Assembly: GCA_001179505.1 (NCBI GenBank)
Contig: CDMY01000421.1
Coordinates: forward strand, 16,397 to 80,207
Direction: 5' to 3'
DNA from: Vitrella brassicaformis CCMP3155
Taxonomy: Eukaryota > Protista > Chromerida
Length of the DNA: 63,811 nt
This document shows positions 55,901 to 63,811 of the stretch, piece by piece (within the stretch, counting starts at the first letter, position 1; each line of letters opens with the position of its first letter). Made by a program: the position numbers and the translations under genes. The notes under the pieces were generated by a model. That model ran no database searches. It was not told the origin of the DNA and worked only from the letters and a program-made list of their open reading frames with translations.

Positions 55901-56637
55901 AAATCCCAACCCCCGTAACACACACGTGCACTCTGTCTCTTCTCTCTGTTCTCTGTCTTTTCAGGAGCTGTCGCTGGTGGTCGACAACTACAAGCGAAGC
56001 CTAGTGGACAGCGGCTCCTTCCCCGCCATGCACGCCACCCGCCCCACCTCCACCTCCCGCCCCAGCTCCGCACACCGCAAGCTCCGCCCGCCATCGTCGT
56101 CAGGCGCACGCACCACCAACACCGGCACTGGCTCGGCCAGGACCACACCCACATCACCTGACAGCGCCTCGCCGCCCTTCGCCCCTGTCAGCCCGTCAAG
56201 TGGGCATTCGTCGAGTCAGCAGGAGCTGCCGATCGCTATGACGATGGCGCGTGGTGAGCTGCTGAACAAGGCTAAAGAGGAGTTGCGGGGCAGGATGGGC
56301 GGGGAGACGTTTGATAAGGGGTTCGCGCTGCTGATCGAGGTGAATAATCCTGAGCCCAGGAGAGGCTATGTGTCCTTGCTGGTGTCATTTCTGTAATGGT
56401 GTGCTTTTTGTTGGCGTGTAGATGCGCCGTGATGCCAAGATAAGTGATCACGACTTGCAGAAGCGGCTGCTGGACACCATAGGAAGGGACCACTTCAAGA
56501 GGTCGGTCAGATGCGGGGACAGTCTCGCACCGGCCCCCTCATACACTGTCCCTTTCTGTCTGTCTGTCTGTCTGCCTGTCTGTCGCAGATACGGGATGGA
56601 GTTAGACCAGCTGGTGTTCAAGACGTTGCTAGGGTGA
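52933..56637 (+). CDS. NIMA-related (NEK) Ser/Thr kinase with long low-complexity C-terminal region
   Basis: IGRGNYG, YIAKK, LEHPNVVAYKDSF, YCEGGDL, ILHRDLKSS|NIFL, KLG|DFGISRVL, TVVGTPYYMSPE|VCENKPYTFKSDVWALGCVLYELCVLK|HAF. Confidence 0.95.
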
Positions 56638-57263
56638 CGAAATGATAGACGCGGAAAGGAAAGAATGATGATAGATGGGAGAAGAGGGAGGGAGGGAGGA
56701 AGACACATGTTGCTGTGCAGTGCATTTGGAAGGAGGCTCGCTGAGTGGCGAACAGTGGATGGTATGTGTGGGCTTGTGCTGCGCTGGTCGCTCTTCTTTG
56801 CTTGCGTGCATCGCAGTTTTGACACCCGCAAAGAGACACAGACAGGGGGGATGGAGGGCAGCTGCTTGGACAGAGATAGATGGAGGGCCAGCCACTGGGC
56901 CATCGCATGGGGGCGGCGGCGTTTTTGTTTTGGAAGGAGGTCACAAAGTGTGGGCGGGAGGATCGATCACTTACCCCGTGTTTGAGCAGACCCATTTCAT
57001 CAATTCGATCGTCGCCCGAGAGTTGCTGCTTGACCATTTGCCGAGTGGAGTCGCCTATTATTTCCATGATCGGTGGATGAATGGACAATCCTAAAAGGAG
57101 TGAGTGAATGCAGTAAGTATGTGAGTGGTACGTTGGATGGGAAGCCTGCATTCGCGTCACGGACTCAGGGAATGGTGACCGATGGGGTGGATGCAATGCA
57201 TTGGAATGAACAGCGTCACCGAGCGATTGAGACACGCGCACATATGTACGCATCAATGATGTC

Positions 57264-57881
57264 TCACCGGTTTGCCGGCGCTGGTGCTGTCAGTCTATCC
57301 AGCACAGCACGCACCAGCTTCTGCAGCAGCTCCAATATGCCTTCGCTGGCAGCAGGAGGCGAATCTGGGGCGTCCAATACCGACACTGGCCGTGTCTTTG
57401 GTGCCTCAGCAGCTGTGGCGCTTGCCGCTTCTCTCAACCGCTCCTGCTTATTCTCGTCTCCTTTCAGGCCACACGAGTCATCCTTTGCTTTGTTCTTGCT
57501 CGTCTCTTTCTTGGGCTTCCCCTCTTTCTTCCTCTCCGGCTGTGCCGCCGCCTTCTGCTCATTGTTAGGTGTTGGCGGCCGCGATTGTGTGGGTATGGGT
57601 GTGCCGTCAGTGAGTGAGTAGGCCGGCCCACCGATCTGCTGCTCCGTCGTGGAGTCCCACCGCAGATTAGACGCCCGGTTATCGTCCACATTGCCATTCA
57701 GATGGACGAAGTTGAGAGACAGCATGTGGTGGGACTCGTACCTCCACAAGTGCTCCAGCTCCCTCTCGCGATGCACCAGGGCAACCAAGTTGGCGACGGG
57801 GACGCCTGTCTTGGCCTTCCGAAGGCACCAGGTCGTCTTTTTCATGCCCCACGTCGTATTTGTGTTCCCCAATGTTGTCTT
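57264..57881 (-). CDS. HNH-endonuclease-motif (HNH_3-like) exon
   Basis: PVANLVALVH...FVHLNGNVDDNRASNLRW matches the V-H-R-L-V-A...H-x-N-G...D-N-R-x-x-N-L-x-W pattern. It is preceded by a clear acceptor (tacacacag|aag at 57882). A possible donor (CG|GTGAGA) at the 3' end means it may continue further. Confidence 0.75.
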   Translation of the reverse strand, partial: KTTLGNTNTTWGMKKTTWCLRKAKTGVPVANLVALVHRERELEHLWRYESHHMLSLNFVHLNGNVDDNRASNLRWDSTTEQQIGGPAYSLTDGTPIPTQSRPPTPNNEQKAAAQPERKKEGKPKKETSKNKAKDDSCGLKGDENKQERLREAASATAAEAPKTRPVSVLDAPDSPPAASEGILELLQKLVRAVLDRLTAPAPANR

Positions 57882-58080
57882 CTGTGTGTATATTAAGGAG
57901 GCAATGGATGGACGAAGACTGGGTGTTTGTTGATTCGTCTGTCATTCGTTCATGCACTGACACAACGAATGCATGAACGCACGGACTCATGTACATTTGT
58001 CTGCGTGCTCAACAAGAGCCACCAATTGCATTGTCTGTCGTCTGCGATTCTGTCCTGTGCCACTTGACACACAAGCTCAT

Positions 58081-59974
58081 TCATGCCTCGAAATGGTAAT
58101 CCGCCTCCTGACAGAACAAAAGACGACCAGACACACGCACCAAAACAGACACATGCACCACACGTAACACATGGATGTGCATATCATCCCTCACCTTGCT
58201 GGCTCTGAACGCTTCGGCAGCCACTCTGGCCTCCTCGACGTTGCCATTGTAGTTCTTCGGGTTGAAGTAGGCGTACCGCTGCTGCGCGCCCTCGTACCAC
58301 GTGACCACCCACCTCTTCCTCGCCTTCCCCCAGCTGACACCCGTCACCTCGCTGCGCGGCACGCCCTCCTTCGCCTTGCCCTTGCCGTTCCTGCGCGGCC
58401 CGTAGCCGGCCCACATCTCACGCGCTGCTTCTTCTGCCAGTGCCTGATAACCAAAAACGTCATTTGTCCCTCCTCCAATGCCTACCCATTACGTGTCTCT
58501 CGTCTTTCCACCTGTGCCTGTTCAGGTGGGAGGTGTCGTGTGATCTTGAACAGACGCCCTGGGATTTTGCCCCTCTGGTTGTTTGGTGGTTGTGCAAGCC
58601 AGGCGTTGTCGCGTTTGACGAACGACACTCCCGGTACGTCGGACTTGTACACACCTGATGAGATCACGGCCTTCCCCTTGGGCTTGCCGGTGCCCAGGGG
58701 GTGGGGCGTGGGGTTGGTGATGTACACGCGATGCTGTCCGCAGTGACGCATGGCCATGTCACGATCCGATCGCGGCGGCATGACTGAACACACAACACAC
58801 ACACACACGCCAACCGCCGTGGGGCTCTGATGATTGTCACCCGCGCCCCATTACCTATCTTGTCATCCTTGTGTTGCTCTTTCTTCAGCTCTTTCTCCAA
58901 CATCTCGGGAACGTCGGCAAGTCGAACACGGTCCCTCTGTGGATTGACGCATCCAGGGATGTGCCATGTTGCGGGCCTTTGTTTTTCTGGAGTCATATTA
59001 CCCTCAATCTCTGTGCGATGGTCCCTCCCTCCCTATCCGCCGCGCCGACCTGGCCCTCAGAGCTCACGCAATCACGACCCTCCTGCACACACAGACCCAC
59101 ACACACCACCCACACACCAACACAGATCACACCACCACCACCCCCTTCCCCCCCCCCCCACACACACAAAGGCTGTTGACGTGTGTGTTAGTGTGCTGTG
59201 GTGGTGTGTGGTCGCCTGATGGATCATTGTCTCACTGGTGCGTCAGCGTCTGTGTGTGGCTGCCGTGCAGTCGTCTGTGGTACCTGCTTTGGGCTGTCGA
59301 CGCCCGTGTGTGTGTTGGACAGGTAGTAGCGGTTGTTGCCCTTCTTGACGATGAAGCATGCCGCCACCAACTCATCCAAACAATCTGACCACGGAAACAT
59401 ACACACGGAGGGAGAGAGGGATGTGTGTGAGTGTGTGTGAGTGTGTGTGAAGGTGTGTAGTGTGGGTGTGTGCCGTTGCGAACCGTCCATCTGTTGCTGT
59501 GTGTGGTTAGGGAATGCCTCCAACAGCTTCTTCTTGACTGCACTCACACACACGTCAAGTGAATGGCAATTGGTGGCTGGCTGTTTCCTGCCAGGCACCA
59601 TCGGGGCTATGTGGTCGCTTCTTGCGGTTGCGGGGCTTCTGCGGCTGGTCGTCTGCGATCTCCTCCCCCGCCCCATTCATGTGGATGTCATCAGCGTCAT
59701 GATCATCATCGCGGCTCGGGGCAGACGACGATGCCACGGCCAGTGTGGGGTGCTCTGCGAGGCGTGGGCTGCGGCGGGGCGGGGGAGGGGCGGATGCAGC
59801 TGTGTGCAATGTGGGCGGGTGGTTGAGCTCCACCGTCTGCGCATCCACCTCCATCGGGGCCGCACCAGCAGCATCATCATTCATGGTGGGTTGCTGTTGG
59901 GCTTCTCGCCACGCCGCAATGATGGCATCGAGATCTGGCGGAAACCTGTACCAGCGGCCTACCTCCTCAGTCAT
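58081..59974 (-). CDS. ApiAP2-type protein with two AP2 domains
   Basis: AP2-1 is SDVPGVSFVKRDNAWLAQ...RLFKI...EQAQ|ALAEEAAREMW. AP2-2 is SEVTGVSWGKARKRWVVTWYEGAQQRYAYFNPKNYNGNVEEARVAAEAFR. Upstream exons start at MTEEVGRW (59974), but some internal exons are uncertain. The end is either EADYHFEA* at 58081 or a splice into the HNH exon. Confidence 0.8.
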
Positions 59975-60042
59975 CTGAAAGTGCGATTACTCAGTCGAAA
60001 CAAAGTCAAAACCGCCTCTCTGTAAATTGTCGTTCGCATCTC

Positions 60043-60050
60043 AGCTCGCA
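60043..60050. promoter_or_regulatory. Candidate promoter motif YGCGAGCT/AGCTCGCR (representative site)
   Basis: The same 8-mer occurs in 11 of 13 upstream or divergent intergenic intervals in the window (see findings). Confidence 0.55.
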
Positions 60051-60052
60051 GA

Positions 60053-62771
60053 ATGTCAGACCCAGAGCTGCCAGACCCTGAGGAAGGAGACCGCGGCATC
60101 TATGAAAGTGCCAACCTCCTCGTCCCGGATGCGCCGAGTCCGTTAGGAGATCTTCCTCACTCAGATGCGATTGAATCTCTTTTCGACGCCTCGCTGCGGC
60201 TGCCGGGGATGCTTATCCGCCTGCTCCAGCTATGCCCTCAGCCCCTTCGCACTGCGCTTGAGTCCCACATTCGCAAGCTGGCTGACGGGAAGCGTCTAGA
60301 GGCCTACCTGGGCGGCATGATCGCTCTCCTGCAGTGAGCATTGAACATGGAATCATCACCGACACACCAGCACTGTCATGAGCGTTGTCCATCTGTGCGT
60401 TTCCCGTTGTCTCAAGCGGTGGGGTCCGCCCACTCCTGCCAGTGGAGTGGCCGTTTGAGTTCAACACGACGCGTTGCATGTTCGAAGACACGCGGGTCAA
60501 GAACGAACCGGTCCACCCAACACTCGATGAGCAGGGGATTCTACCCGCCGGCATGTGGCCCACCCATAGGCTGGTACAGAGGCTGAGGCGACCCGCATAC
60601 ACATTGTCCATCAACCATGTCGCTTGCAGGACGCGATGACTCCGCGTGTGATCGAGTACGCCAACACGCTTGAGGCCACGGCAGGTGTCGCCGTGCAGTC
60701 GCAGTGGCAGCAGATCCTGGCTTATTACAAGGTCGAGGGCATTACCGATTGGGAAGCCCTCCTGCGAGACGCCTGCGCGTCTGAGGATGAGCTCCTGAGG
60801 CCGCGTAAGCCTGAAGGTCAGCATTGAGAGGGAAGGAATGCACAATCACGAATACACACAAACACACACGGCTGTGCATCACATGTGTGTGTGTGTGTCT
60901 CAGAGCGTATCTCCGCGCTCAACCGTCTGTGGACGCTGGGCGGCATTGCGGCGCTTATTGTGGCCATTGGTGACTTCCCTGTCGGCCTCGACCCCAAGAA
61001 GCTATCACCGTGGGTTCGACACCTGCTCTCGGGTCTCACATCATTGCCTGTGTCCAAGGACGACGTAGAAATGACGAGCGAGGTTAGTCACAGTCCGGGC
61101 GACACTGCCGCCCACATACCGCCGCGACGCCGTGTTGATTTGTGTATCTGATTGTAGGATGTCAAGGCTGCGATGATCGAGGGAACTTCCGCAAGCCTCA
61201 CACCGAGGATCAAAAAGGCAGTCGCAAGTGGGGTCGTCCGTCGACATGGCGCATGGAATGCAAACAAAGTCCAGAAGGCTTTGGGTGTGTGTGTGTTGCT
61301 CACTTTAGGTGTGTGTGTGTTGAACCAGCTGGCGGAAGTAGGCACGCCAGCCCATCGTGAGGTGAGGTACAGACTGGAGAACACTGTGGCCCATTGGAAT
61401 CTCGTTAGCGGCATGGCCGTCATCAAGCGCGGTCAGTAGTATAATTAAATCCCACCGTGTGTGGGTAACACTAGATCTTGTGTTGATCTTGTCCTCACAC
61501 AGGTATGCAACTGCACGCCGGGGCTACGCTTTATCAGCTAGGCATCATCACTGAGGCGGCTGCCACCATCTGGACGACTCATCTGTCCTTCCGGCCAGAG
61601 GACAGGCTCAAGATGGACACGCCGGACGACCTGTGGGGAATGCCTGTCACGGACGCGTTAGCGACAGGTCGGTCACTGCGACTGGCAGCAAGAGTCTGCA
61701 CACACAGAGAAGGGAAGGACACAGACAGAAGTCCATCCATCCATTGCCTCTGACTGTGTGCACGATATTGCTTCCCGATGGGCCGCCTGCAGGTCGTGTG
61801 TCACTCCTCGCAGACGAGAATTCAAGATGGCCGCGCCGTGGCGCACTCGCCATTGCCACCGTTGAGCAGGAGGGCGTTGCAAGGAGGGTTCACAAGTGGG
61901 ACATCTTCGACGTAGTGTTTGCCAGTAAGCACCACACCGAGACAGAGGGCCAGCGGGGCATCAGCACATGCGCTCGGTCCGTTCCCTCTTCTGTCAGCTA
62001 AGGGCTTTCCCCCCGATGCCCTCAGGAATCTGCTCATACGTATGGCCCACACGCTCACACCGCGACTGGTGGTAAGACGGCAAGAACAGAGGCGACACGC
62101 GCAATGACACACGGGCAGATGTCGGGTCGTCTCTGCAGGTTTTCCACCTCGGCGATGGCGACGTCCATGGTCTCGATATCGGCCTGGGTCTCGCTGCGCG
62201 ACTGAAGCCCCACAAGATCGAGGTCAACTGGCTCGCCGTGTCAGCTGAGCAGGTCAAACAGTGGAAAAAGAAGGTATGCCCAGGAAACAGTATCGCGCTT
62301 GCACAGCTGTGCTGGGTTCACGTCTGTGCTGTATGTGCACCCTGCCTCAGTTTGACTTGCAGGCGAAGAAATGCAGCGAGGCTGACATGGAGAAGACCGA
62401 GGCTCTGCTGCGTGGCCCCGTCATTGCGCACGAGGGGCGAGACGCCTATCAGACGTGGCTGCGGAAGAAGGAAACAAAGGTGACTGCACAAGACGTGCCG
62501 CATGCCTGAAGCAGCACCAATCTTCTATGCTGACTGTGCACACTCAGATGTGGCGTGACCTCCAGCACCAGATAAAGACCATCCGGGAGACGGGGCAACA
62601 GATGAAGCTCGATGTAAGAATGTCAGAGACTAACGGACGTCAACCGACATACAGACAGTGTGGTGATGTCATCAGATGGTGATCGATCGAGTGGATACAG
62701 CGGTGCTAAAAAAGGTGTTTGGAGACCTGGTGGAGAAGAGGCTAGGTGCAGACGTGGACATGACTTCATGA
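60053..62771 (+). CDS. Divergent Spo11/topoisomerase VI subunit A-like protein (about 599 aa, 13 exons)
   Basis: All junctions join in phase (modelled CDS 1800 nt). Motifs in Spo11 order are HREVRY (Tyr at 61368-70), LYQLGIITEAA, IATVEQEG (TOPRIM Glu), FA|TKGFP, VFHLGDGDVHGLDI (DxD), VNWLAV, SEADMEKTEALL and QIKTIRETGQQMKLD. Confidence 0.8.
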
Positions 62772-63538
62772 CACAGGAGGGGAGATGTGTTGAACCCTCC
62801 CGCACTCGACTGCCCTTCTGGTCTTGAGAATGCCGTCAAGTCCCTCATGCGAGATGTCCACATAGCGAAAGCCGGATGGGTATTTCTTGGTGCCGAGAGA
62901 GGCTCGCTGACAGATACATGCACACAGACACACATACACAGACACACACACGGAGATAGAGACCGAGCGAAGATAGAGACCGAGCGAAGACAATACGAAA
63001 GTGAGAATACCTGCCCGCCCTGGCCGTTCAGCCATACAATGCGCCCATGTGAAGAGACCAGCAGCTTCGACTGGAGGTTGGGATATATCGAATTGAAGAG
63101 GCGGGAGGTTCTCGGGTCTTTCAGGATCTCCCCCTCCGCCAACTCCACCCCCGAGTAGGCAGTTTGGTGGTTCATAACGGACACGAAATCCCCACCTGAA
63201 CCGCGTAGGCTGTCTCTGATGGTGGCGGCCGACAGACCCGTTCTTCTTGCCGCCTCCTCTTGGCTGGATACCTTCAGGTCTGGCTGGCCTTGTCGGCGGA
63301 TCACCATCGGGAACCCTGCCGTCGTGCGTGGGGCCTTCTGCACTGATGGCTCTGCAGCTGACGAGAAGCTTCTGCAGTGGCTGTTTGTGTGGCCATGGTG
63401 CCCATGGCGAGGAGGGGAAGAAAGAAAGGAGGGAGCCTCAGGGGAGAGGAGGGCCTCGCAGCCCTCGCTGAAACTTGAAGCTCTTGTCAGCCGTCGGCCT
63501 GCCGCGGTAGCGTGCTTTGCTGTTCTCCAGAAAGCCAT
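62766..63538 (-). CDS. NUMOD1 + NUMOD4-like DNA-binding protein with mitochondrial-type presequence (about 222 aa, 2 exons)
   Basis: Leader MAFWRTAKHATAAGRRLTRASSFS...RSFSS. NUMOD1-like HTH is VSSQEEAARRTGLSAATIRDSL. NUMOD4-like is SIYPNLQSKLLVSSHGRI, followed by |RASLGTKKYPSGFRYVDI. Intron 63010-62907 is in phase 0. Confidence 0.6.
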
Positions 63539-63811
63539 CTTTCTGCACTTGAAGAGGAAAATTGTTGAAGTTGCTGCGTGCCGAACACACACCGTGGTCA
63601 GAAGGATCAATCTCTGCCGTACAAGCCTTTACGCAAGGCACGCAACGCACGAGTCCATCATGGGCATGGCCAGCCCGCCAAGCAAGACACGCACGAGAGC
63701 TGCCAACGCTCACCGAAGATGCACGAAATAGAAAGACATGTCTGCAAGCTAAGCACAAACCCTGCTATCAAAACCCAACACCCCTTCTCACCTCACGGCG
63801 AAGCTGAGAGG

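What the first reader, a model, noticed from the sequence alone, without database searches (positions are those of the whole stretch)
60053..62771. Intact, highly divergent Spo11/TopoVI-A-like gene with a long novel N-terminal region
It is invisible in the ORF track because it is split over 13 exons. It keeps the Spo11/Top6A catalytic set in order: winged-helix Tyr (HREVRY vs consensus RD/ExYY), TOPRIM Glu (VEQEG vs VEKDA), TKGFP (vs xKGYP) and DxD (GDGDVHG vs DADPHG). Several canonical positions are altered, and about 300 aa with no recognisable family precede the Tyr. It is therefore unlikely to be an ordinary Spo11-1/2/3 orthologue and may be an extra clade with a different role, such as organellar topoisomerase, programmed breaks or a mobile-element nuclease (inference).
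Basis: partly seen in the sequence, partly recalled or inferred. Interest (0 to 1): 0.85.

Follow-up and report, generated by a model that had tools for sequence, protein, structure and literature searches.

The report
Cryptic divergent Spo11/Top6A-like gene
A real, expressed 13-exon gene of the alga Vitrella brassicaformis encodes a 597-residue protein whose C-terminal half is a very divergent relative of the DNA-cutting domain of Spo11/topoisomerase VI-A. The rest of the protein, including the supposed catalytic-tyrosine domain, matches nothing known.

Summary
The gene is real. It runs from ATG 60053 to stop 62771 on the + strand, with 13 exons and 597 aa. Spliced RNA contigs show 11 of its 12 GT..AG introns and correct two junctions of my first model.

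Residues about 405-528 are a Top6A/Spo11-type TOPRIM domain:
- A local HMM of 59 archaeal Top6A proteins scores 15.6 bits (E 3e-7 for one target).
- The best of 3000 shuffles scores 7.7. None of 3000 shuffles that keep nine motif residues in place reaches the real score.
- hhalign gives 89.6% probability.
- E412, D462 and D464 sit on the invariant metal-binding columns.
- A JetD profile fits worse (6.2 bits, hhalign 36.6%).

No tool recovered the winged-helix/tyrosine domain. The only support is the motif R308-E-V-R-Y312, which lies 100 residues before E412 (85-102 in archaea) and arises in 23 of 20,000 shuffles. The first 300 aa match nothing.

I could not send the spliced protein to Pfam or AlphaFold because it has no reference, and I could not fetch eukaryotic Spo11 sequences. 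Fold and clade therefore remain open.

A decayed partial duplicate lies on another contig. The scan flagged four similar hidden Spo11-like loci elsewhere in this genome and flagged this stretch once before. Verdict: an interesting new variant of a known kind, with its mechanism inferred.

The parts
60053..62771 (+). Whole gene: 13 exons, 597 codons plus stop. Exons: 60053-60333, 60417-60573, 60630-60816, 60904-61082, 61158-61227, 61309-61431, 61503-61667, 61793-61924, 61998-62071, 62139-62273, 62351-62479, 62548-62613, 62676-62771.
   Evidence: Joints in spliced RNA contigs for introns 1-11. Model built. Intron 12 (62614-62675) is inferred from GT..AG, the reading frame, and conservation of both splice sites in the duplicate.
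60053..61227 (+). Exons 1-5: N-terminal region of about 290 aa with no recognisable family. The start is acidic. One hydrophobic stretch lies at aa 217-237.
   Evidence: No credible Pfam match for any single exon; only two chance-level matches, E about 0.1 and far below cutoff. Charge and hydropathy.
61309..61667 (+). Exons 6-7 (aa 292-387): the region where a 5Y-CAP winged helix would lie. It holds R308-E-V-R-Y312.
   Evidence: Motif R[DE][ILVM]xY lies 100 aa before E412; the archaeal range is 85-102 and 23 of 20,000 shuffles show it. No domain-level match: Pfam and PDB on the duplicate's contiguous copy, hhalign 0.2%, atlas noise, AlphaFold2 pLDDT 43.7.
61368..61370 (+). Codon of Y312, the candidate catalytic tyrosine.
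   Evidence: The assignment is inferred, not shown.
61843..62431 (+). Top6A/Spo11-type TOPRIM domain, aa 405-528, spread over exons 8-11 with introns 8-10 inside.
61864..61866 (+). Codon of E412, the TOPRIM glutamate.
   Evidence: Aligned to the invariant E column of Top6A.
62154..62162 (+). Codons D462-G463-D464, the DxD metal-binding pair.
   Evidence: Aligned to the invariant DxD columns of Top6A.
61924..62026 (+). T432-K-G-F-P436 ... R441, matching the Top6A/Spo11 'G-x-P ... R' block. The T432 codon is split by intron 8.
   Evidence: G434, P436 and R441 fall on invariant Top6A columns.

Best explanation
This is an intact, transcribed, lineage-specific and extremely divergent member of the Top6A/Spo11 superfamily in Vitrella brassicaformis.

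Shown: residues about 405-528 form a Top6A-type TOPRIM domain with the acidic triad E412/D462/D464 in place.

Inferred: the protein dimerises like Top6A/Spo11. It binds Mg2+ at the TOPRIM site and cuts DNA by attack of Y312, helped by R308 four residues upstream, as in the family's R-D/E-x-F/Y-Y motif. This leaves a 5'-phosphotyrosyl link.

The unmatched N-terminal 300 residues would recruit it to a partner or a target. It is an extra gene beside the standard meiotic Spo11, so its breaks would serve something other than, or additional to, canonical meiotic initiation.
For: - Gene model and expression: spliced contigs in three runs.
- TOPRIM homology.
- Better fit to Top6A than to JetD: 15.6 against 6.2 bits, and hhalign 89.6% over 116 columns against 36.6% over 47 columns.
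- R308-E-V-R-Y312 at the canonical spacing, p about 0.001. Archaeal Top6A proteins carry REVFY or RDVYY at 85-102 residues.
- A canonical Spo11 is reported in Vitrella (PMC7522995).
- The partial duplicate has decayed while this copy keeps every exon open.
Against: - No winged-helix homology by Pfam, PDB phmmer, local HMM, hhalign, protein-language-model features or AlphaFold2.
- Several residues that are invariant in the 59 pattern-selected archaeal sequences are changed. K after the Glu is Q, F is A, T before the Arg is L, P after DxD is V, and the Y..GS block is missing.
- The Top6A score is below Pfam's 24.1-bit cutoff for that family.
- The C-terminal K-x-E motif is not significant.
- The tree does not resolve the gene's position.
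- The motif test is post hoc.
Confidence: 0.45

Rival explanations
1. A TOPRIM-only hydrolytic nuclease or DNA-binding module that works like JetD/MksG. The Top6A-type TOPRIM cuts or holds DNA without a covalent tyrosine. The upstream 400 residues are a new, unrelated targeting or partner-binding region.
For: No tool detected a WHD. The protein sits mid-branch between Top6A and JetD. JetD shows that this TOPRIM clan can act without a tyrosine (general knowledge; PMC10123090 is listed but was not read).
Against: The JetD profile fits much worse than Top6A, and no DUF3322-like N-terminus was found. R-E-V-x-Y sits at the canonical distance from the Glu. No SMC partners lie nearby.
Confidence: 0.25
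2. A catalytically inactive Spo11-derived scaffold or regulator. For example, it might pair with the standard Spo11/Top6A or with a B-like subunit.
For: Many otherwise invariant TOPRIM residues are replaced and the Y..GS block is lost. The WHD is unrecognisable.
Against: The three metal-binding acids, G-x-P...R and the R...Y motif are exactly the residues that are kept. This pattern is expected for an active site under selection.
Confidence: 0.1
3. It is simply the fast-evolving orthologue of one standard paralogue (Spo11-1, Spo11-2 or Spo11-3/Top6A), not an extra clade.
For: I could not build the tree with eukaryotic Spo11 sequences, because one search returned only Asgard Top6A. As I recall, the K-G-F-P form of the motif is the eukaryotic one.
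Against: Vitrella is reported to keep the full core meiotic set, including Spo11 (PMC7522995). Earlier notes list four more hidden Spo11-like loci in this genome (unchecked). A 300-aa N-terminal extension and failure to reach any Pfam hit are not typical of orthologues.
Confidence: 0.1
4. Chance resemblance: the protein is not related to TOPRIM enzymes at all.
For: No public profile library hit any exon. PDB phmmer on exons 8 and 10 found nothing.
Against: HMM E 3e-7. 0 of 3000 plain and 0 of 3000 motif-preserving shuffles reach the real score. hhalign 89.6%. An independent protein-language-model lead on exon 10 points the same way.
Confidence: 0.05

Closest known systems
Spo11 / DNA topoisomerase VI subunit A (Pfam TP6A_N PF04406 + TOP6A-Spo11_Toprim PF21180)
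   Same: TOPRIM domain alignable over about 120 residues. The Glu, the G-x-P...R block, D-x-D...G..I, W-L-x-V and the S/T-x-x-D block are in register. The R-E-V-x-Y motif lies 100 residues before the Glu, within the archaeal range of 85-102.
   Different: About 25% identity at best. The score is below the Pfam cutoff. Several invariant residues are replaced and the Y..GS block is absent. The winged-helix domain is unrecognisable. An extra 300-aa N-terminal region has no family. The protein is 597 aa, against about 350-470.
JetD / MksG nuclease of Wadjet (DUF3322 + JetD_C PF09983)
   Same: Same TOPRIM clan. The core G-x-G ... G-D-x-D-x-H-G-x-x-I stretch aligns (aa 428-479). Both have a long non-TOPRIM N-terminal part.
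   Different: Only 6.2 bits and 47 aligned columns. There is no DUF3322 match and no E-N-x-x-x-F block. It is a eukaryotic, intron-rich gene with no SMC/kleisin neighbours.
Plasmid-borne type IIB variants (Topo VIII, Mini-A) and phage Top6A-like TOPRIM proteins
   Same: They are divergent, stand-alone or rearranged Top6A-like proteins outside the canonical enzyme. A viral cluster carrying PF21180 appeared among the neighbours of exon 10.
   Different: Not compared here because no sequences were fetched. They are prokaryotic or mobile-element proteins.

Membership tests
Spo11/Top6A | Top6A-type TOPRIM domain with the Glu and DxD metal ligands | tested here: met
   Local HMM of 59 archaeal Top6A proteins (three sampled ORFs confirmed by Pfam): 15.6 bits, E 3.2e-7. 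Shuffle controls. hhalign 89.6%. E412, D462 and D464 fall on invariant columns.
Spo11/Top6A | Reaches Pfam's curated cutoff for PF21180 | tested here: inconclusive
   Only single exons (24-93 aa) could be scanned, and none hit. The spliced protein has no reference and was not submitted. My own Top6A HMM score (15.6 bits) is lower than Pfam's 24.1-bit cutoff, but it comes from a different model.
Spo11/Top6A | 5Y-CAP winged-helix domain (TP6A_N) carrying the catalytic Tyr | tested here: inconclusive
   No domain-level match in Pfam or PDB for the duplicate's contiguous exon 6-7 product. hhalign gives 0.2%. Atlas returns noise. AlphaFold2 gives pLDDT 43.7. However, R308-E-V-R-Y312 sits at the canonical spacing, with 23 of 20,000 shuffles matching.
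Spo11/Top6A | Works with a GHKL-type B subunit (Top6B / TOPOVIBL) | not tested
   An earlier unchecked note lists a diverged Topo VIB-like gene elsewhere in the genome (s1-218707).
Spo11/Top6A | Covalent 5'-phosphotyrosyl DNA cleavage | not testable with these tools
   Needs biochemistry.
Spo11/Top6A | Placement inside the Spo11-1, Spo11-2 or Spo11-3 clade | not tested
   No eukaryotic Spo11 sequences could be obtained by reference. One search listed only Asgard Top6A.
JetD/MksG | JetD_C TOPRIM domain | tested here: not met
   HMM of 68 JetD proteins (eight sampled ORFs confirmed by Pfam): 6.2 bits over aa 428-479 only. hhalign 36.6%.
JetD/MksG | DUF3322 N-terminal domain | tested here: not met
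   The full-length JetD HMM reports no N-terminal match even at E 100.
JetD/MksG | Encoded beside SMC-like JetABC genes | tested here: not met
   The upstream neighbour is an AP2/HNH-like gene. The downstream minus-strand ORF has no credible Pfam match.

The most novel reading that the evidence does not exclude
Vitrella, and perhaps chromerids more widely, carries an undescribed, expressed, multi-copy family of Spo11-derived DNA-breaking enzymes. They share a new N-terminal domain of about 300 aa, act apart from the standard meiotic Spo11, and make programmed or defensive double-strand breaks.
Probability: 0.2. Interest if true: 0.8.

Novelty: new variant of a known kind. Interest (0 to 1): 0.58.

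Why it matters
Spo11/Top6A is the only enzyme family known to start meiotic recombination. Outside plants' three paralogues, it is usually present in one to three recognisable copies. An extra, expressed, catalytically equipped but barely recognisable relative, apparently one of several in this genome, would be a new branch of the family in a close free-living relative of apicomplexan parasites. It would give a concrete candidate for non-meiotic programmed DNA breakage. It also shows that genome annotation misses such genes. I found no protein for this locus in the searched databases, and its decayed duplicate is fused into an SF3B3-like gene model.

Tried and rejected
- **Pfam and PADLOC on single exons:** no credible hit.
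- **PDB phmmer on exons 8 and 10:** nothing relevant.
- **The one allowed all-against-all phmmer (exon 5-6 read-through):** it found only P0001, a chimeric Vitrella model that holds the decayed duplicate, plus one repeat protein.
- **The search for homologous proteins with P0001 region 470-700 and with exon 10 inside a stop-free frame:** neither found a protein for this locus.
- **The third homologous-protein search, with a Heimdall Top6A query:** it listed only Asgard proteins, so I got no eukaryotic Spo11.
- **AlphaFold2 on the duplicate's contiguous exon 6-7 product with this gene's exons as alignment rows:** pLDDT 43.7, unusable, and not sent to fold search.
- **Atlas features:** the WHD region gave Matrixin at 0.81 and exon 8 gave low scores. 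Both are noise.
- **C-terminal 'W..EL...K-x-E' resemblance seen in a MAFFT alignment:** not significant, 1.6 bits with shuffles reaching 12.5. Dropped.
- **MAFFT's alternative placement of the Tyr motif at D-T-P-D-D-L-W-G (aa 371-378):** rejected because it lies only 34 residues before E412.
- **Transposon reading:** no terminal or direct repeats in 56000-63811.
- **Organellar reading:** the N-terminus is acidic.
- **Left out:** Pfam/HHpred, AlphaFold and Foldseek on the spliced full-length protein.

Full report
**Gene model.** The + strand between 60053 and 62771 has no long ORF but does hold a chain of short open segments. A GT..AG search that keeps the frame gave a first 13-exon model. Public runs that hold the stretch were found. 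Contigs of three of them (X1, X2, X6) skip exactly the predicted introns, while a fourth (X3) reads straight through like DNA.

Eleven of the twelve introns appear as GT..AG joints. Two junctions differ from my first model. Intron 5 is 61228-61308 and intron 10 ends at 62350. The corrected product has 597 residues. Intron 12 has no RNA contig. It is inferred from its splice sites, which the duplicate also keeps. An in-frame stop lies just before the ATG, and a divergent gene starts 78 bp upstream. The start codon is therefore secure.

**Organism and annotation.** The only significant match of a 93-residue read-through of exons 5-6 among 1.84 billion representative proteins was P0001. P0001 is a 717-aa 'unnamed protein product' of Vitrella brassicaformis CCMP3155. 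Its locus (L001, contig CDMY01000415.1) matches the window from 60715 to 62787 at 80-89% identity.

An exon-by-exon comparison shows that this copy is a decayed partial duplicate:
- Exons 1, 2 and half of exon 3 are missing.
- Exon 4 has lost 62 bp.
- Exon 8 has a 20-bp insertion.
- Exon 9 is deleted.
- Exon 10 has TGG changed to TAG.

Annotators fused its pieces, partly out of frame, to an SF3B3/CPSF_A-like gene. I found no protein for the window's own gene in the length ranges I could search. dN/dS between the two copies is 0.66. That value fits one constrained and one free lineage but proves little.

**TOPRIM domain.** Single exons hit nothing credible in Pfam, PADLOC or the PDB. The spliced protein cannot be given by reference, so I built family profiles locally.

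- *Top6A profile.* A degenerate DNA pattern for E-K-x3-F ... G-x-P-x3-T-R ... D-x-D-P-x-G was scanned over prokaryotic genomes. It returned 87 stretches, almost all archaeal. Three sampled ORFs with ordinary Top6A architecture carry TP6A_N and TOP6A-Spo11_Toprim at E 1e-58 or better, and a fourth does so with an inserted intein, at E 2.5e-48.
- *HMM result.* An HMM of 59 complete sequences scores the 597-aa protein at 15.6 bits, E 3.2e-7 for a single target. It aligns residues 409-528 to the TOPRIM domain. The Glu, G-x-P...R, D-x-D..G..I, W-L-x-V and S-x-x-D blocks are in register.
- *Controls.* The best of 3000 shuffles scores 7.7, and the best of 1076 other open segments of the window scores 4.5. 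So I repeated the control with nine motif residues held in place. None of 3000 such shuffles reaches the real 19.3 bits, and the best scores 16.5.
- *Other evidence.* hhalign gives 89.6% probability over 116 columns. Of the columns at least 90% conserved in the TOPRIM part, nine are identical, including E412, D462 and D464. Several others are replaced and the Y..GS block is missing. Protein-language-model features of exon 10 alone are nearest, among named clusters, to TOP6A-Spo11_Toprim (0.86), ahead of JetD_C/DUF2399 (0.72-0.75). This is a lead only.

**JetD rival.** A second pattern scan over metagenomes returned JetD genes. Pfam confirmed eight sampled ORFs as JetD_C, three of them with the DUF3322 N-terminal domain. 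A 68-sequence JetD HMM gives only 6.2 bits over residues 428-479, with no N-terminal match. hhalign gives 36.6% over 47 columns.

I built a tree of TOPRIM domains from 50 Top6A proteins, 35 JetD proteins and this protein. It separates the two families cleanly. This protein sits on the branch between them, with an end branch of 2.46 changes per site. The tree therefore says only that it belongs to neither crown group. The profiles favour Top6A.

**Tyrosine domain.** The duplicate's model happens to join exons 6 and 7 correctly. That gave me a referable 103-121-residue stretch, 75-80% identical to this gene. The stretch hits nothing in Pfam or the PDB. Its atlas neighbours are noise, and AlphaFold2 gives pLDDT 43.7. 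hhalign of residues 1-404 against the Top6A profile gives 0.2%. So no winged-helix homology is shown.

What remains is the motif. In the archaeal set the catalytic block reads RDIFY, RDVYY or REVFY and lies 85-102 residues before the Glu. Here R308-E-V-R-Y312 lies 100 residues before E412. The pattern R[DE][ILVM]xY in that spacing window occurs in 23 of 20,000 shuffles. This is modest, post hoc support. The C-terminal K-x-E resemblance is not significant.

**Context.**
- *Upstream.* On the minus strand lies a gene with one AP2 domain above Pfam's cutoff (35.8 bits). It also has a weak second AP2 and a sub-threshold HNH_3 match.
- *Downstream.* The minus-strand ORF gives no NUMOD match at E 0.1.
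- *Repeats.* No repeats flank the gene.
- *N-terminus.* It is acidic, so an organellar presequence is unlikely.
- *Literature.* A paper states that Vitrella keeps the full core meiotic set, including Spo11 (PMC7522995). I found no paper that describes a divergent Spo11-like family in chromerids.
- *Earlier scan notes.* They list this stretch again, plus four other hidden Spo11-like loci and a Topo VIB-like locus in the same genome. I could not reach those sequences, so they remain leads.

**Verdict.** A Spo11-like covalent mechanism is the best single reading (0.45). A tyrosine-independent TOPRIM nuclease is the main rival (0.25). They are the decisive next steps.

Noticed in passing
L001:12043-13925 (Vitrella contig CDMY01000415.1): A decayed partial duplicate of this gene. 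It has deletions, a frameshifting insertion and a premature stop. Annotators merged it, partly out of frame, into the SF3B3/CPSF_A-like protein P0001. A separate 101-aa gene call covers its last three exons.
   Followed up: yes
window 57264-59974, minus strand: A head-to-head neighbour whose ATG lies 78 bp from this gene's ATG. It has one AP2 domain above the Pfam cutoff, a weak second AP2 and a sub-threshold HNH_3 match (17.4 bits).
   Followed up: partly
window 62672-63610, minus strand: A long open frame that overlaps the last exon in antisense.
   Followed up: partly
window 61668-61752 (intron 7): Contigs of both RNA and DNA runs break here with loose ends. One DNA contig replaces 80 bp with 22 other letters. 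This looks like a dispersed repeat or an allelic indel inside the intron.
   Followed up: no
window 61201-61338: One contig of run X1 reads straight through intron 5. This is either intron retention or DNA carry-over.
   Followed up: no
L006:2075-4771 (also L066, L082): Nitrososphaerales/Thaumarchaeota Top6A genes of about 900 aa. In L006, the only one scanned, an intein with a LAGLIDADG domain is inserted in the TOPRIM domain.
   Followed up: partly
P0075, P0088: Top6A proteins of about 463 aa, listed among Asgard hits, whose precomputed Pfam list also holds ubiquitin-like domains (PF00240, PF11976).
   Followed up: no
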